From the NCBI GenBank assembly GCA_002269645.1, contig NIVC01003161.1:1-64000 (forward strand): 64,000 nt of DNA. The letters are read 5' to 3'. Within the stretch, counting starts at the first letter, position 1. Each line of letters begins with the position of its first letter. A program made the translations under genes and the position numbers. This document shows positions 11,575-63,111 of this stretch, in pieces. Under the pieces are notes generated by a model, which saw nothing but the letters and a program-made list of their open reading frames with translations, made no database searches and had not been told where the DNA came from. Origin of the DNA: Macrostomum lignano (taxonomy: Eukaryota).

Positions 11575-12012
11575 CCCTGTAGACATGCCTGTAGATATCC
11601 CTGCAGATATTTCTGTAGATAGCCCTGTAGATATCCCTGTAGATATCCCTGTAGATATCCCTGTAGACATCATGTAGATATCCCTGCAGATATTTCTGTA
11701 GATAGCCCTGTAGATATCCCTGTAGATATCCCTGTAGATATCCCTGTAGACATCATGTAGATATCCCTGCAGATATTTCTGTAGATAGCCCTGTAGATAT
11801 CCCTGTAGATATCCCTGTAGATATCCCTGCAGATATTTCTGTAGATAGCCCTGTAGATATCCCTGTAGATATCCCTGTAGATATCCCTGTAGACATCATG
11901 TAGATATCTTTGTAGATATCTCTGTAGATATATCTGTAGATATCTCTGTAGATATATCTGTAGATATCTCTGTAGATATATCTGTAGATATCTCTGTAGA
12001 TATATCTGTAGA
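11575..12012. repeat. 12-bp minisatellite
   Basis: Unit gtagatatccct and variants. Confidence 0.95.
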
Positions 12013-12466
12013 TGCTTTTATAGATGACTTTGCAAATGTCGATTTAGATTCTCTATGCTATATTTTTATACAGATTCCAACGAAGCTATTCGTATCCAGA
12101 TGACCTATAGATGCTATCTGGATATCCCAAGCTATAACTGATTCTCATAGATGTCTGCGCTCGCAAATGAGCACAAAAACTCCATCCATGCCTTTCCTAT
12201 GATAATTATAACTACTAAAATAGCTGGTTAAAATTTATTGTTTACATTGACAACATACAATTGGCACTGAGACTATCTGCGAGTGCGCAGCGCTGAGTCT
12301 GCTCAGATTTTATTGATACAGTGAGTATTCTGCCGTGTAGGCACAGACAAAATTCTGAAGCCCAAAGCAAACAAGTAATTCTGTTTTTGTATCAATACAA
12401 ACTCTAGTAACTGAGATTTGCTCCACAAAATTCTACAGAGTTATTTAATTAGTTTGTTTCTTATAG

Positions 12467-13875: not shown

Positions 13876-14905
13876 TTTTCGGCTACTCAACCTTGTTGCC
13901 TACTTTATCCCAACTGAAAACTCTATGTCAGATGCCTATTCTACTCCCGCTGCCGACTCTACCCCCACGCCAGGCAAAGTAGTAGGCCCGTTGCCTACTC
14001 TACCCCAGCTGCCGACTCTAAGCCAGCAGCCTATATACTCTACTACCGCTGCCTAATCTACTATTTTATATCGCTGCTTAACACTACCTTCACTGCGAAT
14101 AAATAGATACACATGTATTTAAAGTAGACGGGTTCAAAATGAAAGGCACACAAAAAGCATTATAAGCCTGAAATTTGAATTCACGCCAAAACCAGTAGCT
14201 ATATATAACGAATGTCCGTGCTTGAAAATTAATTATATATTTGTTTTTTTTAAACCGGATGCCCCCACCGTAGCGTGGCAACTAAAAGACGCATTCGCTA
14301 TCAATTTTATGACAAAACTTTTCTGTTCGTTACTTTGGTTTAAAGCGAAAAGCCATTATAAGAATATAATAAAATACATTATTTCTTATTCGCAAAGTAC
14401 GAGCTAGCTAATTTCTTCCCAAAGGCAAGAAGCAACTGTTGATGGGAAAACTAGAAATAATATTAATAATAAAACAGCATTACGATCAATTGATAAAAAA
14501 AATTGCAAAGCGAATTTTATGCAAATGATAGCTAAAGTACTGACACCGTTTGATAAAACAAACTAAACGGTTTTGTTTTAATTTTAATCACGAATCGAAG
14601 TGAACCGCTTTAAAATCTTCTTAATAATACATTTTCTAAAAAAATGAGATTCTAGATAAACAAATAACTGATTTATTAATTTGTTTTGTATATAAAGTAA
14701 ATCAAAACAACAGCCAAATACGGGAACAGAATGGGTTGTATACATAAATATTCCTAAAACTGTTTTTACTTTAAATGTCCAATTCAGCGCTGCTTTGTTG
14801 TAAAAATATATCTAAATAAATCATAACGATATTTTATCGGACTTTACTTGTATGCATAAAAGTACATCATATCAAATTATATTCTAGTGAACAGCATATA
14901 CATGT

Positions 14906-14948
14906 CAAGGACGACTAGGAACACTTCGTTATAGTCTAGTAGTCCTTG
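14906..14948. mobile_element. 43-bp micro-MITE of the CAAGGAC family with 8-bp TSD
   Basis: CAAGGACGACTAG...CTAGTAGTCCTTG (12/13 inverted match), flanked by ATACATGT at 14898-14905 and 14949-14956. Confidence 0.85.
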
Positions 14949-16368
14949 ATACATGTACAGTGTGTATAGTACAATAAGTGTAAAATACTGGGTAATTTAG
15001 ATTCCCTAATATTATTATTAGCACGAAGTACGCTCGTAATATAATAATTACTTGGTTTCATATACATATTGTTTACTATTAAACATCATATCACAGTGCA
15101 GAAATTTTTAAGGATTCATAACATTACATAAAACAACAAATACAACTTTGCTGAAAAATTTAGGAAGTGCCACGAATAAGAGAAAACAAATGATTTGGAC
15201 ACATGAAAAATAATGATTTGCCATTTTCGAAAGAACTAAAACTAAAATTTTATTCAAAATTCAGCAACAAAAGTATCCAGGTCGATACAGCGAATTTTCA
15301 ACGCATCACAAAGCCGGAAATTCCGGTATCATAGATTTGTTATAAATAGCGAAATAAGCCTTGAACCAACAACAGACTGCGCACAAACAACGAGGCAATT
15401 AATACAACAATCTAGTACTGATGGGTAAAATCGCCCTCTCCGATTTTACTATTGACAAAATTAACTACACGAAATCCGAGTCCAACTTTTTCCGGCTTTT
15501 TTGGTGTCTCTTTTTGGTTCACACGGACATTTTCGACAACGAGAGAGAAGCCCATTTAAACATAGAATAAGTTTTTTTAAACGACACTAATTATTACACC
15601 GAGTAAAGTGGGTTTTCTCCAATATTAAAAAAATACGTACCTGGTGCTTAATAAACTGCCGTTGCTGTGCAGGTGAGGTGGCCGCGGCTTTGAGAAACGA
15701 AACACCAATCGCGAACACAATAAAAACCTCGATTTGAGCGAACAGAAGCAGAGCAGCGCGAAGCAAAAAAAATTAAATTGCTTTGCTTTTCTCTAGTTTT
15801 ATCCGACACCAAAAATTAGAAAATGATAGTGCATGGCTCGTATGAAACCCAAAAGTTTTATGGTACGTGATAGTTAGAAATAAGAAAGAAATTACCGAGT
15901 GTGCTCTCTAATGAAAGCGACGCGTTTTAGATTGACATTCATTTTGCCCCTCCATTTTGCTTAAAAAGGCATTCCCTACGTTTTTATCAACGGATTTGAC
16001 ACCTAAACTGTGCAAATTTTACCATAAAATAGGTTGGGTAACTACACCATTCAGAATGATCTTACTAAGTAAGCTCAAAATTATATAGTAAGGAAAATAT
16101 TGAAAGGTTAAAAATAATAAATAAATTTCTATGAAAATAGTGAAAGAATAAAACAAGAATCAGTTTCTGCTCGGCTAGAAAAGTCGTTAAATTTTTCGAA
16201 ACTTCTCCACACTTCGTATCGTATTGAGCAAATTAATAAAATCATTAAACAAATGGAACTAGTTGACCCCAACTAAAGTCTAAAGATCCCCATTACAAAT
16301 ATATGGCTCGATGGCTTTTTGTCCATAAATAGGTATATTTGTCGCAAAAATATATGGATAGAATTAAT

Positions 16369-34302
<17,934 letters not shown>

Positions 34303-38702: not shown

Positions 38703-41700
38703 TCATCCCTGCTGATAAACGGACTCGAATGGCGGCCGCGGTCCGATATTGTAACCCCGATACCGGCAAAACAAAAACGTGGCTCCAACGCTCACGGCAG
38801 CCAGAACGCAGGCCAAAGTAGCCGACGAAAGCAGGAAATGCCCCCTCAGCCGGAAGCTCTTCGACACTGGCTGGTCGCCGCCGAGCCAACACGCAGCCGG
38901 ATCGCAATTCGTCCATCGCTGCGCTTCGCCAACGCAGAAGTCGTGCGGCGTAACGTTGCCCAGCACGCGTTTGTTGATGCAGCTGCGCAGCGAAATGGAA
39001 CGCCTGTTGCCGTTGGCGTTGCCGCACTCCGGCCGGCAGCGGTCCCACTGCGACCAGGGACTCCAAATGCCAGTCCATTGTGCGCAAGTTGGCCCGCTGT
39101 AGCCAGAGTTACATTTGCAACGACCTGAATAGCAAGCAGGCGTGGAAATGCACATATTTCCACCTAATGACCACCTAATGACCAGACACATCTAATGACC
39201 ACAGAGACACAGGCACCGAGTGCAAAGACACAGCTAATGACCGCAGAGACACAGGCACCGAGTGCAAAGACACACCTAATGACCGCAGAGACACAGACAC
39301 CGAGTGCAAAGACACACCTAATGACCACAGAGACACAGACACCGAGTGCAAAGACACACCTAATGACCACAGAGACACAGGCACCGAGTGCAAAGACACA
39401 GCTAATGACTGCAGAGACACAGGCACCGAGTGCAAAGACACACCTAATGACCGCAGAGACACAGGCACCGAGTGCAAAGACACACCTAATGACCACAGAG
39501 ACACAGGCACCGAGTGCAAAGACACAGCTAATGACCAGAGAGACACAGACACCGAGTACAAAGACACACCTAATGACCACAGAGACACAGACACCGAGTG
39601 CAAAGACACAGCTAATGACCACAGAGACACAGGCACCGAGTGCAAAGACACACCTAATGACCACAGAGACACAGGCACCGAGTGCAAAGACACAGCTAAT
39701 GACCGCAGAGACACAGGCACCGAGTGCAAAGACACACCTAATGACCACAGAGACACAGGCACCGAGTGCAAAGACACAGCTAATGACCGCAGAGACACAG
39801 GCACCGAGTGCAAAGACACAGCTAATGACCGCAGAGACACAGGCACCGAGTGCAAAGACACAGCTAATGACCACAGAGACACAGGCACCGAGTGCAAAGA
39901 CACACCTAATGACCACAGAGACACAGGCACCGAGTGCAAAGACACACCTAATGACCACAGAGACACAGGCACCGAGTGCAAAGACACACCTAATGACCAC
40001 AGAGACACAGGCACCGAGTGCAAAGACACACCTAATGACCACAGAGACACAGGCACCGAGTGCAAAGACACATCTAATGACCACAGAGATACAGGCCCCA
40101 AATGCAAAGACACATCTAATGACAACAGAGACACAGGCACCGAACACACATGAGCTCACCATAGAGACACTTCTATCAAGTCATTCATAAGTCAGAACTT
40201 TGCCTTCTACCCTAATAAACATAAAAAAACGCAATGAACTTGCTTAAATTTCCAATTTTCGACGAAATGAAATATCCATTGATGCAGTTCATTGACAGGC
40301 ACACGTTCCTATAGGCAGCGCAGTTATCGTAGGCTAGAGCTAGGTCCCGAGCTCGTTGAAACGAGCAGACGCACTCCCAATTGGGGATCGAGTTACTCAT
40401 TTTGCTCCTACGACAAGTTCCCAGGTCTGAAACATCAAGGAATGGATGAAAGCTTTCAGAAGAGATAGAATTCATGTCTCACTAGGATTCATAGTCAGAT
40501 AGGATTCGCGTCAGATCGTGCTTCTTCATGTACCGATGGAAGTTGTGTCAGCTTCTTCATGTACCGATGGAAGTTGTGTCAGCTTCTTCATGTACCGATG
40601 GAAGTTGCGTCAGCTTCTTCATGTACCGATGGAAGTTGTGTCAGCTTCTTCATGTACCGATGGAAGTTGTGTCCGCTTCTTCATGTACCGATGGAAGTTG
40701 TGTCCGCTTCTTCATGTACCGATGGAAGTTGTGTCAGCTTCTTCATGTACCGATGGAAGTTGCGTCAGCTTCTTCATGTACCGATGGAAGTTGTGTCCGC
40801 TTCTTCATGTACCGATGGAAGTTGTGTCAGCTTCTTCATGTACCGATGGAAGTTGTGTCAGCTTCTTCATGTACCGATGGAAGTTGTGTCCGCTTCTTCA
40901 TGTACCGATGGAAGTTGTGTCCGCTTCTTCATGTACCGATGGAAGTTGTGTCCGCTTCTTCATGTACCGATGGAAGTTGTGTCAGCTTCTTCATGTACCG
41001 ATGGAAGTTGTGTCCGCTTCTTCATGTACTGATGAATTGTGTCAGCTTCTTCATGTACCGATGGAAGTTGTGTCCGCTTCTTCATGTACCGATGGAAGTT
41101 GTGTCAGCTTCTTCATGTACTGATGATATTTGTGTCAGCTTCTTCATGTACCGATGGAAGTTGTGTCCGCTTCTTCATGTACTGATGATATTTGTGTCAG
41201 CTTCTTCATGTACTGATGGAAGTTGTGTCAGCTTCTTCATGTACTGATGATATTTGTGTCAGCTTCTTCATGTACCCTTCATGTACCGATGGAAGTTGTG
41301 TCAGCTTCTTCATGTACTGATGATATTTGTGTCAGCTTCTTCATGTACCGATGGAAGTTGTGTCAGCTTCTTCATGTACCGATGGAAGTTGTATCAGCTT
41401 CTTCATGTACCGATGAAAGTTGTGTCCGTTTATTTATGTCCCGATGGTCACATCACGTGCATCAAAGCCTAATAAAATCTGGCAAAGCAAATTTCACACG
41501 CACTTACCATCATACGTGGCGCATGCGAAGTTCCCTGACACCCTGTGCAACGGATGCCGATCGGTGCACGGATCCGCCTGGCAAAGCAAATTTCACACGC
41601 ACTTACCATCATACGATGCTGACACCCTGTGCAACGGATGCCGATCGGTGCACGGATCCGCCAGACGTTCTTAGCCTTCTTTACAGACGCAGATCGTCTC

Positions 41701-42041: not shown

Positions 42042-45000
42042 TAGACAGACAGACAGATATACACTAAGACAGACAGACAGACAGTATGGCATAATTAGTC
42101 TCACTGTCCATTCTCGGAGTTCTTCACCCGCTTGCAGCGGGCATTGGCGCAAGGATCGGGGCAGAAGGCCTCCAAAAACCAACTGAACATGAGCGGCACA
42201 ATTTCGTCAGAAGCGTTAAACTTATTGGCCAACGAAGACAACCGGTGGGCCCAGTGGCAGGAGATAAAGCAGATGTGACCATTGTAAAATAGGTCCGATC
42301 GCAATTTACTGTCCGTCGGTACCCTTCTCGAGTAGATGTTGTGCCGAAAATAGTGCAGCAGTGAAGCTTTAAGCTGATCCTTCGGATGAAATCTGTGTTG
42401 TAAGAGGCGATAGAAAAAAGTAAAATTTCATACACTTTGACGCGTGTTACGTTTTCAGACTTTTGCATCGATAAACATCCGGTTCGAGTAAACAAGTAGA
42501 ACAGATATCCAATTAGATCCACTCTCCACTCTCGGATAGAGCAAACATCCGGTTAGAGCAAACATCCGGTTAGAGCAAACATCCAATTAGAGCAAACATC
42601 CGATTAGAGCAAACATCCGGTTAGAGCAAACATCCAATTAGAGCAAACATCCGATTAGAGCAAACATCCGGTTAGAGCAGATATCCAATTAGAGCAAACA
42701 TCTGGTTAGAGCAAACATCCAATTAGAGCAAACATCCGGTTAGAGCAGACATCCGGTTAGAGCAAACATCCAATTAGAGCAAACATCCGATTAAAGCAAA
42801 CATCCGGTTAGAGCAAACATCCGGTTAGAGCAAGCATCCGGTTAGAGCAAGCATCCGGTTAGAGCAAACATCCGATTAGAGCAAACATCCGGTTAGAGCA
42901 AACATCCGGTTAGAGCAAACATCCGGTTAGAGCAAACATCCGGTTAGAGCAAACATCCGGTTAGAGCAAACATCCGGTTAGAGCAAACATCCGATTAGAG
43001 CAAACATCCGGTTAGAGCAAACATCCAATTAGAGCAAACATCCGAGTAGAGCAAACATCCGGTTAGAGCAAACATCCAATTAGAGCAAACATCCGATTAG
43101 AGCAAACATCCGGTTAGAGCAGATATCCAATTAGAGCAAACATCCGGTTAGAGCAAACATCCGGTTAGACCAAACATCCGGTTAGAGCAAACATCCGGTT
43201 AGAGCAAACATCCGATTAGAGCAAACATCCGGTTAGAGCAAGCATCCGGTTAGAGCAAACATCCGGTTAAAGCAAGCATCCGGTTAGAGCAAACATCCGG
43301 TTAAAGCAAACATCTGGTTAGAGCAAACAAACCAAGTAAACAAAATATATAGGCACAAATGCAAAACTACTCACTGCGTCATCATATAGGAAGTCCAGTT
43401 AAGCTTGAACTGGATTGGATCCCGTCTAACGGTGACTTCACCGCCCCAACTTTTTAGGAAATCTTCCGCTAAATTGGCTAGCACGTTGAGTATGTAGTCA
43501 GGTATGTCGGGTTCCATTGAGCTTTTAACGAAATTCTGCACCACTTTGGTAATGCTCTTTCTGTAACTAAGCTGAGTGACCCGGATGGTTTCACGAGTGT
43601 AATTGCAAGCCCGATTAGTGATTTCCATGTACGGGTTTTGACGCAAATCTGGTAGATAGCATGCTCTGTTTACATCCAGCAGTTTCGTTACGCTGATATT
43701 TAATAGATCATAGAAGCGACCCATCTGGCTCATGTCCAGCTTGTACGGTCGCAAATTGGCGCTGACAAACTCCGGAGTGAAGCCCCCATATTGACTGGTT
43801 GGACAGGCGAATGACAGGTAGGCTGGCGGGATGCCACCCACCGGCTTTTGGCTCACTCGGCGATAAGCTTGGATGTCGAAAATTTTTAGAGGCTTGGTCG
43901 ACCTGAAAGCGGTTGGAATTAGGCGAATGAGGTTTGTTTTGTACTTTAGTCTTTAACTACTGCCATTTTTGTCACACCGCTGACGTTGCTTGTTGTGATA
44001 GACTCCGTTCTGTCCCACGTTCAATTAAGCGCGAGGGGCGCAGCCTTCCTTTTAAATAACCTTCTGCCCTACTAGCGCTCAGTAACTACAGTTTGTTCTT
44101 GTGCATGCGTGGTTGGTTGCAGAAATTTTCGATTCTACGTTCGCCTGGCATAACACATTAATGTCGATAAAAGCTTTACAAGACTCAGTCAGTGGAATCT
44201 TTTAGTGCTATATTTGAGCTCTAACGTATCTTCGGCCAAACGACGTCAAAGAAAATCAGCGTTGCAAACTATTAATTTAAAACAAATTTTACTCTCACCG
44301 AATTGCCAGAAAGAGCGCGTGCTGCGATCTGCAAGCTTGATTCAGCATGATTTCTTCCATTCCAATTGTAGTTCTGGTCAACAGGTTGGAAAACCTGCCG
44401 CAGACTGTCCAGTACTTCCAGGATATTAACTTATTGTACCAATCGACCTTTTTGTTCGCTGATTTGAATTGGTACCGCCTGCCAGAAGCTGAGGTAAACA
44501 GTGAGTCAGGTGTGCTTGTCATATCCGCCGCGGCTAACAGCTCAGCGCCTTCCAAGCCCTTCAAACCAAAGTCAGATTTTTCCAAGGTTTGTGGTTGTAC
44601 CAAAGCTTGCAGCTGGTCGTTTTTTCAGTAATCACCGTCTGCAGCTTCTTCGACTTCTCAGAAGAACGAAACGTCCTCGGATCGACGCTTTTGCCAACAA
44701 TGCACATGAATCCTTTGTTAAAGTAGCGACCGACTATCATAGTGAGCGTTCCTATTAGGTAGAGGTCAGATTTGGCGTAATCCTGGCATACAACGGAATC
44801 GTTAACCGACAATACCTGCCAGTCAAGAAGATAAACTGTAGAAACTCTAGTCTTTTTGCTGTAGTTGATTCGATCAAAATCTTTACGTTTCATGTCCCGC
44901 AATAAGGTTGGACTGATTGAACGAACGGAACGTGAGTGACTAGAGCTTGGTAGGGTAGTTCAATTATTATCCAATGGTAGCCTGCATCCACGGCCGAATA

Positions 45001-47825: not shown

Positions 47826-49105
47826 TAAGTAAGTCAGCCAAAAGTTTCCGGAATTTTTTAGAATCGAACTTTTAGTTAATTTTTGTCTATGGAAAAGCTT
47901 AAAAGCAGCAACCATCTACTATGCTGTTGGCCAGCCTTATCATCACTCTTTAGCTTAACATTGCTCAGTTTCCCAGACCCTGCCTACTTAAGCCAGCAAG
48001 CGCATCCAATGGAACTGCCAAGAACTGAATGGCGAGCAATTCTGCTCAACCACTTTCATGCGGGACGCAACGCAGCAGAAGCACATCGCGAGTTGTTGCA
48101 GCTGATGGGCCCACATGCACCCTCCAAGTCGTCGGTGTACGACTGGTTCTCTTGCTTTGCTGAGGAGAACTATGAGCTGAAGGACAAGCCGAGGTCAGGC
48201 CGACCCCCTGCTGCTGATGGCGATGCCGTTCTCCAAGCCCTTGAGGACAATCCGGACTACAGCGTGCGCAAGCTGTCAGCCGCTACTGGGGTGTCCTATG
48301 GCACGGTCCGGCGGAGCCTGCATGCTGCAGACAAGGTGCCGAAGAAGCCAACTCTGGTGCCCCATGAGCTGACACCTCAGCAGCTGAGAGCCAGGGTGAA
48401 TGTGGCAACTTCGAATCTTCGCCAGGCCGGTTCGCCAAACTTTCTCAAGTCGATAATCGCTCAAGACGAGAAGTGGGTCTGCTATGAGAACCCAAGCACA
48501 TCAGCCGTCTGGGTCGATGCTTCTGAAGAACCACCCAGCTGCCCAATGCGGAACCCCCACTGCGGCAAGGAGCTGCTCTCTTTCTGGTTCTGTTCGTCTG
48601 GCCCTGTTTTCTGGGAGGTCATCCCGCATGGCATGGCTGTGAACGCGGAGGTGATCTGCAGCGAACTGGAGCAGGTCGCCCGTTTGCTGCGATCCGTGTG
48701 CCCGGGACACCGCGACAAGGTGCTCCTCTTCGACAATGCGCGGCCTCACAAAGCAAGACTCACCCAGGCCAAGCTGGCAAGCCTGGGCTTCAGTGTTTTG
48801 CCCCACCCACCATACTCGCCAGACCTCTCGCCATGCGACTACCATGTGTTCAGGTCTCTCCAGAGCTTTTGTGATGGACAGCGGTTCGCCAACAAGCAAC
48901 ATGTGGAGCAGGCAGTGCAGAAATGGATTGATTCAAAGCCTGCGAGCTTCTGGAGGGAGGGGATTGACGCATTGCCAGCAAGATGGGAGAGGGTCAAGGC
49001 CTTGAATGGCAACTACATCACATCGCTGTAAACTGTTTGTTCTTGACACTATTTGTTATAGTTTTAAAATGTTCAAATTCCGGAAACTTTTGGCTCACCC
49101 TAATA
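47826..49105 (+). mobile_element. Mariner (Tc1/mariner, D,D34D) DNA transposon, ~1.28 kb
   Basis: Perfect 21-bp inverted repeat AGCCAAAAGTTTCCGGAATTT (47836-47856 / 49075-49095). Right end reads TATTAGGGTGAGCC on the minus strand. Encloses a transposase ORF. Confidence 0.93.
48009..49031 (+). CDS. Intact mariner transposase, 340 aa
   Basis: ATG at 48009; HTH region, LVPHEL (WVPHEL-like), QDEKW, FDNARPH, YSPDLSPCDY with 34 residues between the 2nd and 3rd Asp; no stops. Confidence 0.93.
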   Translation: MELPRTEWRAILLNHFHAGRNAAEAHRELLQLMGPHAPSKSSVYDWFSCFAEENYELKDKPRSGRPPAADGDAVLQALEDNPDYSVRKLSAATGVSYGTVRRSLHAADKVPKKPTLVPHELTPQQLRARVNVATSNLRQAGSPNFLKSIIAQDEKWVCYENPSTSAVWVDASEEPPSCPMRNPHCGKELLSFWFCSSGPVFWEVIPHGMAVNAEVICSELEQVARLLRSVCPGHRDKVLLFDNARPHKARLTQAKLASLGFSVLPHPPYSPDLSPCDYHVFRSLQSFCDGQRFANKQHVEQAVQKWIDSKPASFWREGIDALPARWERVKALNGNYITSL

Positions 49106-50872: not shown

Positions 50873-51930
50873 ATGCCTCCAGGTAAAAGATAAAACTTCT
50901 TAACTGCACAGGGGCCCTTTTTAATCTACAGAAAGTATCAATTATCATTTTAGAAAATTGGATTTTCCTTGTCCTACAACTGCTGGGTTTTCTGACTGTC
51001 TGCCAGTGCAGGTCCGGAGACACCTGGACTCAGGTGCAGGTGCAGTGCCTGTCTGAGGCCGCCGCGATTTACCGAGCGCAGGCGAGCAGCGATGTGCACT
51101 GCTCTGTGATCGCGTCCAGCAAGCAGAAAGTCGGAATCATTTTGGCCCAGTTCGAGCCGGCCTCTCTCCGCTGCAGTCTCTTCCGCTACCAGTCCGTGTG
51201 TCGCGACCTTGTCTCTGGCGGTGCGAGCAGCGACTGCCGAGTGCTCATCCGATTTCCGATCAAATATCCGGCTCAGCTCAACCCGAAGCTCACAAACGTG
51301 TGGCTCGGAGACGACATGTCTGCATTTGAGAATGTCGTGTGCCAGGCTGACGAAGAGACCAACCGAATTTATCCGGTCGGAGTCCAGTGGACAGAGGAGG
51401 GCGCCGCGTTCGATGGGAGCAGCTCGTTTCTGGCCATGAACAAGAGCGACATCGGGTTCGGCACAGGCGTCACGGTGCTGCTCAGGATGAAGCGGCAGCC
51501 GCAGGTGCAGCCGCTGTTTGAGTTCCTGGACTGCGCCAACTTTGCCACAGGACCTTACTACCACCACATCTGGGAGTATTCCTCAGTATCAAGGTTCTAT
51601 GTCCTCTTCTACGATACTAATTCAGTACGTAACAGAATCATGTCGTCAGCCCTTCTTACCGCGAACGCCGGCGAGTGGATTGACCTCGGATTCACGTCGA
51701 CACCGACAACAGACTCTTATGGAATGTTTGTGAACGCCTCCTTCTTGCCGATGTCTGCCATCGATTTTCATACTGTAACTGCTTCTATTTCGGTGTCAAA
51801 GTTCTGCTTTCGGTTCGGCAAGCGGTACAATCATGCCACCCTATTCAAGGGCTCGGTCAAGGCCATCGCAATCGGCAACAGCTTCATGAACGAAACCGAG
51901 ATTCGAGACTTCTTTGCCGCCCTGCCGTGA
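50873..51930 (+). CDS. Secreted protein, 328 aa: signal peptide, Cys-rich (PAN/apple-like) N-domain, LamG/concanavalin-A-like domain (paralogue 1, intact)
   Basis: join(50873..50882,50954..51930): ATGCCTCCAG|gtaaaa...ttttag|AAAATTGG. SP WIFLVLQLLGFLTVCQC; LamG-like motifs GAAFDGSSSFL, TVLLRMK, GEWIDLGFT, FKGSVKAIAI. Confidence 0.8.
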
Positions 51931-54229: not shown

Positions 54230-55440
54230 GGCAGGACGCCGCGATTAGGCCGTGAGGCCCCTATCGCAACCCCCAGCTAAAAACAGAAAGGCGTTAGCCT
54301 TGGGGCTGCACCCACCTTGCCAGCAGCAGAAGAGCTCGCGAGGGTGGCGTCCGCGATCTTCATCCGTCCAGAGTCCCGAACGAATGCGCGTAGGTCCCGG
54401 ATCCGGTCCGGAGTGGTGAGCTCGTTCAGCCCTAGCGGGCGACCGAGGTGACGTCTCCGCGCCTCGTTGAAGTGCGGGCAGAAAGTGAAGTGGTGCGTCG
54501 AGGTTTCCTCCTCTAAATCACAGAAGGGGCAGATAGGGGAGCAACCACTTTGTAGTGAAATATGTCTCTGGAAGAAGCCATGGCCAGAAATTACCATGCA
54601 CATCTCCATGAGGTCAGTTTTACTTAAGGAGATTAGATAGTCAAATACTTTCCGGTTTATGGCAGGCATTGCCGTTCGTGTTTGCCGACATTCGGAGCAG
54701 CTGTTCCAGTGCATCTGGTGTTGGTGGTTCAGCCATTCTTGATGGCGCGGTTGACTGATGACTTCGGAGAAGGTAACTTGACCGAGCGTTGCGCTCCATC
54801 CGGGATGCTACCCCGTTTGGTGAGTTGATCCACTAGCTCGTTGCCGAGGATGTTGCTGTAACCTGGTGTACAGATAACATTGATCCTGTTGAGAATCGCC
54901 ATGGTCTGCAAGCTTTTGAAGCAGTCTGAAACTGACTTGGTTGAGAGCTTGATGAAAGACAAGGCCTTAATAGCGGCCTGACTGTCAAAGTAAAAATTTA
55001 TGTCCAAGCTGCTGATGCCAGCTTTGTGCTAATGCTCAGCGCACTGTTTGATGGCCATAACTTCGGATTGAAAAACTGAGACATTCTCACCAAGATGAAG
55101 ACTCTCTTGTAAGATCGCCTCACCCTTGTGGAAAATGGCTATGCCCGCGCCAGCCAGGTCGTCACACAGGGATCCGTCAGTGAAGCAGTGAATGCCATGG
55201 CTTCTCCGGTTGATGCCCACGTTCATTGGGTGCATCCCTCGCGGCGGAAGGGTACACTTGAAGCCCTTCCTGAGAATGAGAGTGTGGGGTTTACAGTCCA
55301 TCTCGTCTAAATTGAGTTGGATGTGTTGAAGGTCGCAACGGATGTAATCCAGATGTGGGATGGGAGTCTTCTCAGGCATGAAGCCCGATGGGCTCAGAAA
55401 GTCATGGTGACGGGTCTGTTTGATGCTGTATGTGTTACTC
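54230..55440 (-). mobile_element. 5'-truncated non-LTR retrotransposon with RNase H and CCHC domain (R1/Loa-like)
   Basis: RNase H motifs [38 protein letters not shown]; C-terminal SGHG...[18 protein letters not shown]; frameshifted. Confidence 0.88.
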
Positions 55441-56524: not shown

Positions 56525-56992
56525 ATGTGTACAGGTAAGAAATAAGCACAAGCATCCTGTTTCATTCGAATCCATGATTTAAAAGTGTAATTTGACCGTC
56601 AAAACCTTCAGTTTCTTTTCTGCTTGCGTGGCTTGAGTTGATGGCTTTTATGACTGGCTGCCAGTGCAGAGCCGGAGACACCTGGACTCGCATGCAGGTG
56701 CAGTACCTGTCCGATGCTGCCGCATTCCGCATCTCCGAGGCGGTCAGCCACCAGCACTGCTGCATGCTGGCATCCAGCTCTGTCTTATCCGGCATTCTCA
56801 TTGCCCAGTTCGAGCCGGCCTCTCTCCACTGCAGTCTCTTCCGCTACCAGTCCGTGTGTCGCGACCTTGTCTCTGGCGGTGCGAGCAGCGACTGCCGAGT
56901 GCTCATCCGATTTCCGATCAAATATCCGGCTCAGCTCGACCCGAAGCTCACAAACGTGTGGCTCGGAGACGACATGTCTGCATTTGAGAATG
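56525..56992 (+). pseudogene. 3'-truncated LamG-family paralogue 2
   Basis: Micro-exon ATGTGTACAG|gtaaga (56525-56534) and exon from 56612, the same structure as paralogue 1. Homology stops at GDDMSAFEN (~56992). Confidence 0.8.
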
Positions 56993-57940: not shown

Positions 57941-58990
57941 ATTTTTTTATTTTATTGATACAACTGCTGTAGGGCTTTTTGAAATGCTGTCTGGGCAGGT
58001 CCGGAGACACCTGGACTCAGGTGCAGGTGCAGTGCCTGTCTGAGGCCGCCGCGATTTACCGAGCGCAGGCGAGCAGCGATGTGCACTGCTCTGTGATCGC
58101 GTCCAGCAAGCAGAAAGTCGGAATCATTTTGGCCCAGTTCGAGCCGGCCTCTCTCCGCTGCAGTCTCTTCCGCTACCAGTCCGTGTGTCGCGACCTTGTC
58201 TTTGGCGGTGCGAGCAGCGACTGCCGAGTGCTCATCCGATTTCCGATCAAATATCCGGCTCAGCTCAACCCGAAGCTCACAAACGTGTGGCTCGGAGACG
58301 ACATGTCTGCATTTGAGAATGTCGTGTGCCAGGCTGACGAAGAGACCAACCGAATTTATCCGGTCGGAGTCCAGTGGACAGAGGAGGGCGCCGCGTTCGA
58401 TGGGAGCAGCTCGTTTCTGGCCATGAACAAGAGCGACATCGGGTTCGGCACAGGCGTCACGGTGCTGCTCAGGATGAAGTGGCAGCTGCAGGTGCAGATC
58501 TTCTTCGATTTTCTAAACTGTGCTGACTTCGAAACCGGACCCTTCTACCACCGTATCTGGGAGTTCGCCGCTGCTTCTAAACTCCTTTTCGTGATCAAAA
58601 CCGAAGCCGGTGCCACTCCCACACGTTATCAATCCAAGGACCACTAGAAGTTGCCGAAAGACAACGGTCACTTCTAGTGGTCCTTGTATCAATCTTCGAC
58701 AACTCCGCGGACTTCGAACGCCAACGAGTGGGTGAACATCGGCTTCACATCGACTCTAGCGGCTGACTCGACTCCAGCGGAGCGTTCGTGAACGACGCCT
58801 CTTGCCGACAGCCTCCTTCAGCCTGATAGCTAATTCTAGCTATACTCTGCTGCCTCAGTTCTGCTTCAGATTTGGCAAGCGACTCAGTAATGACCGAATG
58901 TTCAAAGGCACAGTGAGGGCAATCGCCATGAGCGGGGCTTCATGTCCAAAAGCGAGATCCGCTAATTCTTCGCTGCTATTCATTGATTTA
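57941..58990 (+). pseudogene. Disrupted LamG-family paralogue 3
   Basis: Near-identical to paralogue 1 over 57995-58479, then diverged. TAG in the signal region, 52-bp TIR insertion, 5-bp duplication and further frameshifts. Confidence 0.82.
58635..58686. mobile_element. 52-bp micro-MITE of the CAAGGAC family with 17-bp perfect TIRs and 8-bp TSD
   Basis: CAAGGACCACTAGAAGT / ACTTCTAGTGGTCCTTG flanked by TATCAATC at 58627-58634 and 58687-58694. Confidence 0.92.
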
Positions 58991-62868: not shown

Positions 62869-63111
62869 CAAGGACCACTGTAGAAAATACGACGTAAAAC
62901 TCAAAGATTGTGCTACTTTTTTGGACTTCGATTTCGTGGAAAAAATAGACTGCAGAAGATAAGAAAAAAATCGTTCATATTAAATCACATAATCAATGAC
63001 TGCATTAATTTGATCAGGGGCAGTAAAGATCACATTTTTGCAGGAAATCGGCCTCGGAAAACACTACACGATCTTTGAGTTTTACGTTCTGTTACTCTAC
63101 AGTGGTCCTTG
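62869..63111. mobile_element. 243-bp MITE of the CAAGGAC family
   Basis: 16-bp perfect TIR CAAGGACCACTGTAGA, extended by the subterminal match ACGTAAAACTCAAAGAT(T/C)GTG. Flanks GAGAGGAG / AAGAAGAG match 6/8. Confidence 0.85.

What the first reader, a model, noticed from the sequence alone, without database searches (positions are those of the whole stretch)
14898..14956. Second micro-element of the same family: 43 bp, a different perfect 8-bp TSD and an unrelated spacer
Seen: ATACATGT-[CAAGGACGACTAG-GAACACTTCGTTATAGT-CTAGTAGTCCTTG]-ATACATGT, 44 kb from the 52-bp copy. It shares the ends CAAGGAC.ACTAG but has a different TSD and interior, so it is an independent insertion. Inference: either minimal elements are mobilised as such, or larger copies repeatedly collapse to their termini with filler DNA (abortive gap repair). 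Either way this suggests a dispersed class of hairpin-forming micro-MITEs that repeat finders with length cut-offs would miss.
Basis: partly seen in the sequence, partly recalled or inferred. Interest (0 to 1): 0.7.

Follow-up and report, generated by a model that had tools for sequence, protein, structure and literature searches.

The report
Tiny transposon remnant in flatworm DNA
A 43-base hairpin-shaped insertion in flatworm (Macrostomum lignano) DNA is a real, very small leftover of a cut-and-paste transposon: only the two ends of the element survive, around unrelated filler; this is an extreme case of a known kind of thing.

Summary
At 14898-14956 a 43-bp element (13-nt inverted ends, 12/13 complementary, 17-bp spacer) lies between two perfect copies of ATACATGT. 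The same ends (CAAGGACNACTAG) bound a 52-bp element at 58635-58686, which has a different perfect 8-bp duplication. A related 243-bp MITE at 62869-63111 shares the first 11 nt.

Chance does not explain this. The end motif occurs 4 times against 0.22 expected. End-plus-duplication configurations average 0.035 per simulated window.

The window is Macrostomum lignano DNA. The 8-bp duplication and CAAGG terminus fit hAT, but a P-like superfamily is not excluded. No matching transposase gene lies in the window.

The same ends also flank 30-52-bp hairpin elements with perfect 7-bp (once 8-bp) duplications at about 15 loci on ORF-poor (eukaryote-like) metagenome contigs. None of 33 matches in prokaryote genomes and viral contigs has one. 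Tiny elements of this type are therefore a recurrent class.

The likeliest origin is that a longer copy inserted here and later lost its interior through interrupted gap repair or end joining with filler. Movement as a 43-bp unit is not excluded. No more M. lignano DNA could be reached, so empty sites and copy number remain untested. Interest is moderate.

The parts
14898..14905 (.). left copy of the 8-bp target-site duplication ATACATGT
   Evidence: identical to 14949-14956; the match does not extend to a ninth base on either side
14906..14918 (+). left terminal inverted repeat CAAGGACGACTAG
   Evidence: 12/13 complementary to the right arm; same motif as the 52-bp copy
14919..14935 (.). 17-bp spacer GAACACTTCGTTATAGT with no detectable relation to the family or to nearby DNA (filler)
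   Evidence: best local alignments to the 52-bp and 243-bp members have p = 0.07-0.4; 9-mer matches elsewhere in the window are below chance expectation
14936..14948 (-). right terminal inverted repeat; read inward it is CAAGGACTACTAG
   Evidence: with the next base (CAAGGACTACTAGA) it is identical over 14 nt to the ends of metagenome group A elements
14949..14956 (.). right copy of the 8-bp target-site duplication ATACATGT
58627..58694 (.). sister element: 52-bp hairpin element 58635-58686 (arms 17 nt perfect, about 22 nt with 2 mismatches, 8-nt centre) between TATCAATC copies (58627-58634 and 58687-58694)
   Evidence: it lies inside ORF 57979-58647 and supplies that ORF's stop codon
62861..63119 (.). 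third family member: 243-bp MITE 62869-63111 with ends CAAGGACCACTGTAGA..., arms about 76 nt at 79% identity, flanks GAGAGGAG and AAGAAGAG (6/8 match)

Best explanation
The 43-bp sequence is what remains of a non-autonomous cut-and-paste (class II, TIR) transposon of an undescribed Macrostomum lignano family. The family has ends CAAGGAC-N-ACT(AG) and makes 8-bp target-site duplications. Shown: the element lies between a perfect 8-bp duplication, and it shares its 13-nt ends with two other elements in the window that have other duplications. It therefore results from its own integration event by a transposase that cuts the target with an 8-bp stagger. Inferred: a longer copy inserted at ATACATGT and then lost almost its whole interior at this site. 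There are two possible routes. In the first, the copy excised, and repair of the break copied from the sister chromatid stopped after only the ends had been copied; the ends were then joined with 17 bp of filler. In the second, the transposase cut inside the inverted repeats, as P transposase does 17 nt in, and the repeat-bearing donor ends were joined by end joining with filler. Both routes keep both duplication copies and only the terminal nucleotides. The superfamily is most likely hAT (8-bp duplication, CAAGG = YARNG); a P-like superfamily is the alternative. The element codes for nothing, lies in AT-rich DNA with no recognisable gene, and has no evident function apart from being able to fold as a hairpin.
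For: The anatomy is exact. The end motif occurs 4 times against 0.22 expected. TIR plus TSD configurations average 0.035 per simulated window, against two with the same ends in the real window. A third, 243-bp member has an 8-bp flank repeat matching 6/8. The spacer is unrelated to the family and to local DNA, as expected of filler. Neither the 43-bp nor the 52-bp interior recurs in the 64 kb. Position 8 of the end differs between the two arms here and in two external elements, L094 and L116, so the arms are two separately evolving ends, not a copied palindrome. hAT elements are defined by 8-bp TSDs and YARNG termini (PMC3014272). Maize Ds-l4 elements share only about 30 bp at either end with Ac and carry variable filler; like all Ds-related elements in that survey they have 8-bp TSDs, and none of the Ds-like elements tested moved with Ac (PMC3260210). 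P transposase cuts 17 nt inside the repeat (PMC7776569). In external group A, five loci have identical 18-nt arms and centres that differ only by small insertions or deletions. That fits junction diversity from repeated formation.
Against: No empty site, homeologous copy or longer parent with exactly these ends (…ACTAG…) was seen. No transposase of a 7-8-bp-TSD superfamily lies in the window (Pfam on 38 ORFs). Sizes cluster within external groups: group A spans 39-45 bp, and most of the CTCTATA group spans 47-52 bp with one of 30 bp. Open-ended gap repair does not predict this; a fixed-stagger footprint or spread of one small unit fits better. hAT excision as classically described leaves no repeat remnants (my knowledge), and the TSDs here do not fit the hAT target consensus nTnnnnAn (my knowledge). 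Most external relatives make 7-bp duplications, which is unusual for hAT.
Confidence: 0.55

Rival explanations
1. The 43-bp element is a mobile micro-MITE. A transposase that needs only the roughly 13-14-nt ends excised and reinserted it as a 43-bp unit, and the 52-bp copy is another such unit.
For: Both micro-elements have perfect TSDs and nearly perfect ends. External elements with the same ends form size-clustered groups that are homologous over their whole length at different loci: the CTCTATA group has 6 or more loci of mostly 47-52 bp sharing a CTG(G/C)nCAG centre, and group A has 5 loci of 39-45 bp. There is precedent: human Made1 is an 80-bp MITE made of two 37-bp repeats and 6 bp of interior (PMC1784062).
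Against: No second copy of either interior occurs in 64 kb. The 43-bp spacer is unrelated to the 52-bp interior, so at least two different units would be needed. hAT and P elements normally need subterminal transposase-binding sites beyond the TIR (my knowledge; PMC7776569 for the P element). Two ends 17 bp apart would be hard to bring together in one transposase complex (inference). In group A the arms are identical while only the centres vary, which fits junction diversity better than old diverged copies.
Confidence: 0.25
2. It is specifically an excision footprint of a P-like (THAP9-type) transposon. The transposase cuts one strand well inside the inverted repeat, so the donor site keeps both TSD copies plus a stretch of each repeat, and the ends are joined by end joining with filler.
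For: The family and its relatives make 7-bp and 8-bp duplications. The 8-bp length matches P elements (PMC7776569); 7-bp duplications in some P-superfamily members are my recollection. The P element's 17-nt staggered cut is documented. Zebrafish Pdre2 has 13-bp TIRs and 8-bp TSDs. In external group A about 18-22 nt is retained per side at every locus, as a fixed stagger would give.
Against: The CAAGG end does not resemble the P or Pdre2 ends (CATGATG from my knowledge; CATACCTG). The 52-bp copy keeps at least 22 nt per arm and the 43-bp copy only 13, so one stagger length does not explain both without trimming. No THAP or P-transposase ORF was found.
Confidence: 0.15
3. It is not a transposon product. 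It is a chance or repair-generated small palindrome that happens to be flanked by a direct repeat.
For: Short hairpins carrying CAAGGACNACT arise without transposition: 60 of 121 metagenome matches are simply longer palindromes, and none of the 33 prokaryote and viral matches has a TSD. ACATGT within the TSD is itself palindromic.
Against: Two elements with the same 13-nt ends, each with its own perfect 8-bp direct repeat, plus a 243-bp member, occur in 64 kb. Simulations give 0.035 such configurations per window with any ends.
Confidence: 0.03

Closest known systems
Maize Ds-like class 4 (Ds-l4) elements of the Ac/Ds (hAT) family (PMC3260210)
   Same: They share only the terminal repeat region with the autonomous element and carry variable, unrelated filler. 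They have 8-bp target-site duplications. None of the Ds-like elements tested moved with Ac. Together this reads as decayed or collapsed derivatives.
   Different: [quoted passage not shown] The element here is 43 bp with 13-nt ends and 17 bp of filler, it is from a flatworm, and its autonomous partner is unknown.
Human Made1 (MiHsmar1), the Hsmar1-derived MITE (PMC1784062)
   Same: A miniature element consisting essentially of the two terminal inverted repeats around a few bases, so it is a near-palindrome that folds as a hairpin. The 52-bp sister copy and external group A have this architecture.
   Different: Made1 is 80 bp, belongs to Tc1/mariner (TA duplication) and is a homogeneous high-copy family. 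The 43-bp element has an 8-bp duplication, an unrelated 17-bp spacer and no known identical copies.
P-element donor-site footprints and internally deleted P elements (PMC7776569; footprint literature from my knowledge: Staveley et al. 1995, Beall and Rio 1997)
   Same: 8-bp duplication retained on both sides with a stretch of each inverted repeat left between them. This arises from a long staggered cut and from incomplete repair.
   Different: The end sequence is unrelated (CAAGG... versus CATGATG...). No THAP9-like gene is linked. Retained arm lengths differ between the two M. lignano copies.
hAT-superfamily MITEs in general (PMC3014272)
   Same: 8-bp TSD, short TIR beginning with YARNG (CAAGG), no coding capacity. 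The 243-bp member is of ordinary MITE size.
   Different: 43 bp is well below the usual MITE size range (roughly 50-800 bp, my knowledge). The TSDs do not fit the hAT target consensus. External relatives with the same ends mostly make 7-bp duplications.

Membership tests
Non-autonomous class II (TIR) transposon derivative / MITE-like element | terminal inverted repeats at the exact element boundaries | tested here: met
   13-nt arms, 12/13 complementary
Non-autonomous class II (TIR) transposon derivative / MITE-like element | target-site duplication of fixed length directly flanking the ends, differing between copies | tested here: met
   ATACATGT here, TATCAATC at the 52-bp copy, and a 6/8 8-bp repeat at the 243-bp copy
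Non-autonomous class II (TIR) transposon derivative / MITE-like element | several copies sharing the ends, more than chance gives | tested here: met
   4 arms against 0.22 expected; three elements in 64 kb; simulation mean 0.035
Non-autonomous class II (TIR) transposon derivative / MITE-like element | presence/absence polymorphism (an empty site with a single copy of the target) | not testable with these tools
   no paralogous site in the window; no other M. lignano DNA reachable
MITE in the strict sense (homogeneous, amplified family) | many copies with the same interior at different sites | tested here: inconclusive
   no second copy of the 43-bp or 52-bp interior in 64 kb; the genome-wide count could not be made
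hAT superfamily | 8-bp target-site duplication | tested here: met
   definition from PMC3014272
hAT superfamily | terminal motif YARNG | tested here: met
   CAAGG (C=Y, A, A=R, G=N, G) at both ends of all three members (definition)
hAT superfamily | target consensus nTnnnnAn (my knowledge) | tested here: not met
   ATACATGT has T2 but G7; TATCAATC fits on neither strand; only three sites, so this is a weak test
hAT superfamily | autonomous copy with the same ends encoding a hAT transposase (BED, DDE, hAT dimerisation domain) | tested here: inconclusive
P superfamily | 7-8-bp target-site duplication | tested here: met
   8 bp in M. lignano; 7 bp in most external relatives; P and Pdre2 make 8 bp
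P superfamily | linked THAP9-type transposase, and cleavage inside the TIR | not testable with these tools
   no THAP or Tnp_P_element hit in the window ORFs; mapping cleavage sites needs experiments
Made1-type TIR-only palindromic MITE (Tc1/mariner) | TA target-site duplication and ends of a mariner element | tested here: not met
   the TSD is 8 bp and not TA; the mariner in the window has unrelated TIRs GTCAGCCAAAAGTTTCCGGAATTT

The most novel reading that the evidence does not exclude
CAAGGAC-N-ACT(AGA) marks the ends of a transposon lineage present in several animal or other eukaryote lineages. On this reading its transposase needs only about 14 terminal nucleotides, so hairpin elements of 30-60 bp are themselves the mobile units. 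They would be a cross-phylum class of 'micro-MITEs' below the size floor of current MITE finders, able to insert into exons, as the 52-bp copy has.
Probability: 0.15. Interest if true: 0.7.

Novelty: new variant of a known kind. Interest (0 to 1): 0.4.

Why it matters
If such 30-60-bp end-only elements are common, repeat annotation in repeat-rich genomes such as M. lignano misses a whole layer of transposon-derived insertions. Some of these sit in exons: the 52-bp sister copy supplies a stop codon to an ORF that UniProt models as a protein. Their arm lengths and junctions record how the transposase cuts and how the host repairs the break. A census could therefore show whether a long-stagger (P-like) cleavage mechanism operates in flatworms and other eukaryotes. 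For this single locus the consequence is small: it is an inert remnant in AT-rich DNA with no recognisable gene.

Tried and rejected
**Reaching more M. lignano DNA.**
- The UniProt protein P0002, which reads into the 52-bp copy, is not on record for any contig.
- The nearest ORF, 16372-16761(-), has no homologues.
- The mariner transposase ORF brought no M. lignano contigs; the best hit is 82% identical on a 1.4-kb JGI contig.
- Empty-site, homeologue and copy-number tests were therefore impossible.

**Empty site within the window.**
- Self-BLAST shows no second copy of the 14.9-kb locus.
- The paralogue of the 58-kb locus (50917-51577) ends 70 bp before the insertion point.

**Origin of the spacer.**
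- It has no significant similarity to the other members and none to local DNA.
- The AGGAACACT stretch inside the spacer resembles the end core AGGACCACT (8/9), but p is about 0.4, so I rejected it as evidence.

**RNA genes.** No Rfam family or tRNA occurs anywhere in the window.

**Transposase.** 38 ORFs were scanned against Pfam. Only a mariner transposase was found.

**Literature.**
- Searching the end sequence returns only unrelated primers.
- M. lignano genome and transposon papers do not describe DNA-transposon families.

**Source of the external contigs.**
- BLAST of all fetched loci against the window gives only low-complexity hits, so they are not close Macrostomum relatives.
- Their organisms were not identified.

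**Longer elements.** A search of all fetched loci for longer elements with the same ends found none.

Full report
**Observation.** The window reads ATACATGT | CAAGGACGACTAG | GAACACTTCGTTATAGT | CTAGTAGTCCTTG | ATACATGT at 14898-14956, exactly as reported.
- The two 13-nt arms are 12/13 complementary. The mismatch is at position 8 (G versus T).
- The flanking 8-mers are identical, and the match does not extend to a ninth base.
- The sister copy lies 43.7 kb away at 58635-58686. It is 52 bp long, with arms perfect for 17 nt and continuing to about 22 nt with two mismatches, and an 8-nt centre. Both flanks are TATCAATC.
- As single-stranded DNA the two elements fold as hairpins of -9.3 and -20.2 kcal/mol (z = -4.0 and -9.4).

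**Chance.** Chance does not produce this.
- CAAGGACNACTAG with at most 1 mismatch occurs four times, and these are the four arms. 0.22 are expected, and no shuffle in 100 reaches four.
- I scanned for any 10-nt inverted ends (at most 1 mismatch) immediately flanked by a perfect 8-bp direct repeat, element length 20-300.
- Outside a 16-bp satellite and an AT-rich low-complexity stretch, the real window gives these two elements plus one unrelated candidate at 55267-55378.
- 200 first-order Markov simulations average 0.035 per window.
- Two hits sharing the same ends cannot be coincidence.

**Organism and context.**
- ORF 57979-58647 is 99% identical to a UniProt protein of the flatworm Macrostomum lignano, so the window is M. 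lignano nuclear DNA.
- The window is full of satellites. It holds an apparently intact mariner element with TIRs at 47833-47856 and 49075-49098 and a transposase ORF at 47883-49028.
- The 43-bp element lies in a 33%-GC stretch.
- Nearby ORFs have no Pfam domain, and ORF 16372-16761(-), the nearest that looks coding, has no homologue.
- No Rfam family or tRNA is present. The element therefore sits in DNA with no recognisable gene.

**A third member.** Relaxing the motif to two mismatches shows a 243-bp MITE at 62869-63111.
- Its ends are CAAGGACCACTGTAGA....
- Its arms are about 76 nt at 79% identity.
- Its 8-bp flanks match at 6/8 (GAGAGGAG and AAGAAGAG), in GA-rich DNA.
- The family therefore has ordinary MITE-sized members and consistently makes 8-bp duplications in this genome.

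**The spacer.**
- The 17-bp interior has no significant similarity to the 52-bp or 243-bp members; the best local alignments have p = 0.07-0.4.
- Its 9-mers match the window less often than chance predicts: 3 against about 8.
- It behaves as filler of unknown origin.

- 60 of the 121 matches are simply longer palindromes, whose flanks are also inverted. The sampled palindrome-type contigs are ORF-dense, like prokaryote DNA.
- 22 hits, at 15 distinct flank pairs, have a direct flank repeat instead. It is a 7-bp repeat with at most one mismatch in all but one case, and a perfect 8-bp repeat in L094. Fourteen hits, at nine distinct loci, have a perfect 7-mer.
- Most of those contigs are ORF-poor: stop-free coverage is at or below 0.35 for 18 of the 27 contigs measured, although a few are ORF-dense, for example L116 (0.84) and L037 (0.82). 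Sampled palindrome-type contigs range from 0.6 to 1.0.
- By chance a perfect 7-bp flank match is expected 0.007 times in 121 hits.
- As a control, the same pattern in 596 Gb of prokaryote genomes gave 31 loci and in viral contigs 2 loci. None has a flank repeat.
- The search fixed positions 1-7 and 9-11 of the ends and the size range of 30-60 bp. The informative result is therefore the flank repeats and the type of contig, not the conservation of the ends.
- The right arm of the 43-bp element is nevertheless identical over 14 nt (CAAGGACTACTAGA) to the ends of one external group.
- Position 8 is free. It differs between the two arms of the same element here, in L094 and in L116.

**External group A.**
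- It comprises five loci of 39-45 bp.
- The structure is CAAGGACTACTAGATTAC-(3-9 nt)-GTAATCTAGTAGTCCTTG.
- The arms are identical across loci, apart from one substitution in one contig (L026).
- The centres differ only by small insertions or duplications.

**The CTCTATA group.** This second group has six or more loci, mostly 47-52 bp and one of 30 bp.

**Overall.** Tiny end-only hairpin elements with target duplications recur in eukaryote-like DNA. They are not peculiar to this window.

**Mechanism.**
- Shown: the element results from its own integration event by a transposase that staggers the target by 8 bp.
- Inferred: a longer copy inserted and was then reduced in place.
- One route is interrupted synthesis-dependent repair after excision, with the ends joined through filler.
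- The other is end joining of donor ends that keep part of each repeat, because the transposase cuts inside it.
- Precedent 1: maize Ds-l4 elements share only about 30 bp at either end with Ac, carry variable filler and have 8-bp duplications. None of the Ds-like elements tested responded to Ac (PMC3260210).
- Precedent 2: the P element has a 17-nt staggered cut (PMC7776569).
- The rival is that the 43-bp unit itself moves. It has a precedent in human Made1, an 80-bp element made of two 37-bp repeats and 6 bp of interior (PMC1784062). The size clustering within the external groups gives it some support.
- For collapse or footprint: the unique, unrelated spacer here; the lack of any repeated interior in 64 kb; the identical arms with variable centres in group A; and the usual need of hAT and P transposases for subterminal sites (my knowledge).
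- I put in-place reduction at 0.55, of which a specifically P-like footprint is a sub-case (0.15 as a separate statement). I put movement as a unit at 0.25, and a non-transposon origin at about 0.03.

**Superfamily.**
- An 8-bp duplication and a CAAGG terminus meet the two structural criteria of hAT (8-bp TSD, YARNG; PMC3014272).
- Against hAT: the duplicated 8-mers do not fit the hAT target consensus (my knowledge), and most external relatives make 7-bp duplications.
- The P superfamily also makes 8-bp duplications, and zebrafish Pdre2 has 13-bp TIRs. Its ends (CATACCTG...) do not resemble these.
- No transposase of either type lies in the window. The assignment stays open, and hAT-like is the better guess.

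**What could not be done.**
- No further M. lignano DNA was reachable.
- The window holds no paralogue of the 14.9-kb site.
- Empty sites, homeologous copies, the genome-wide copy number and the autonomous parent are all untested.
- One indirect point on the sister copy: a second M. lignano protein model (P0002, 99% identical but not identical to the window ORF) also ends ...TRYQSKDH. It reads into the same 52-bp insertion. A second, non-identical record of this gene (another genomic copy, allele or assembly version) therefore carries the same insertion.

**Verdict.** The feature is real, correctly described and transposon-derived. It is an extreme, 43-bp case of a known kind of object, a non-autonomous TIR element reduced to its ends with filler. 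It belongs to a family not described in the searchable literature. Whether the elements move as units remains open.

Noticed in passing
window 57979-58700: The 52-bp sister element sits inside a 222-aa ORF of a tandemly duplicated M. lignano gene family (paralogues at 50917-51577 and 56643-56992) and supplies its stop codon (TAG at 58645-58647). With the element and one TSD copy removed in silico, the frame runs on for about 29 more codons. Element plus TSD is 60 bp, so the frame is kept but a stop is introduced. UniProt model A0A1I8GAB7 (P0002) also ends ...TRYQSKDH, inside the element.
   Followed up: partly
window 62869-63111: A 243-bp MITE of the same family, with ends CAAGGACCACTGTAGA, arms about 76 nt at 79% identity and 8-bp flanks matching 6/8, inserted next to a GA-rich low-complexity tract.
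   Followed up: partly
window 55259-55386: An unrelated candidate micro-element: 112 bp (55267-55378) with ends TTCCTGAGAA and TTCTCAGGCA (9/10 complementary) between perfect TGAAGCCC copies. It is the only other non-satellite hit of the TIR plus TSD scan.
   Followed up: no
window 47833-49098: An apparently intact mariner-type element of about 1.27 kb: 24-nt TIRs (96% complementary) and a 382-aa ORF with Mos1 HTH and DDE domains. The closest database protein is 82% identical, on a 1.4-kb JGI metagenome contig.
   Followed up: partly
window 23163-29203, 30521-32005, 39184-40143, 40520-41447, 42473-43329, 18433-18888, 11902-12025: Large tandem-repeat (satellite) arrays occupy a substantial part of the window. 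One is about 6 kb with strong purine skew, and one is a 16-bp satellite. This fits the reported repeat richness of M. lignano.
   Followed up: no
metagenome loci L005, L010, L012, L013, L017 and about 40 others (contig series Ga0105053-55, Ga0209390, Ga0209491, Ga0335398): A highly repeated 52-bp perfect hairpin (CAAGGACAACTCCTGTCATGATCAAGCTTGATCATGACAGGAGTTGTCCTTG) is embedded in a longer palindrome (tatttatacc ... ggtataaata) on many contigs of related samples. Its flanks are inverted, not direct, so it is not this transposon type. Its nature is unknown.
   Followed up: no
L071 2145-2176, L002 109-142, L096 1029-1061: The same external locus (TSD AATTATC) appears in three samples with elements of 32, 34 and 33 bp that differ only by single-base length changes in the loop. 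The loop contains GATAATT, the reverse complement of the TSD. This may be coincidence in AT-rich DNA.
   Followed up: no
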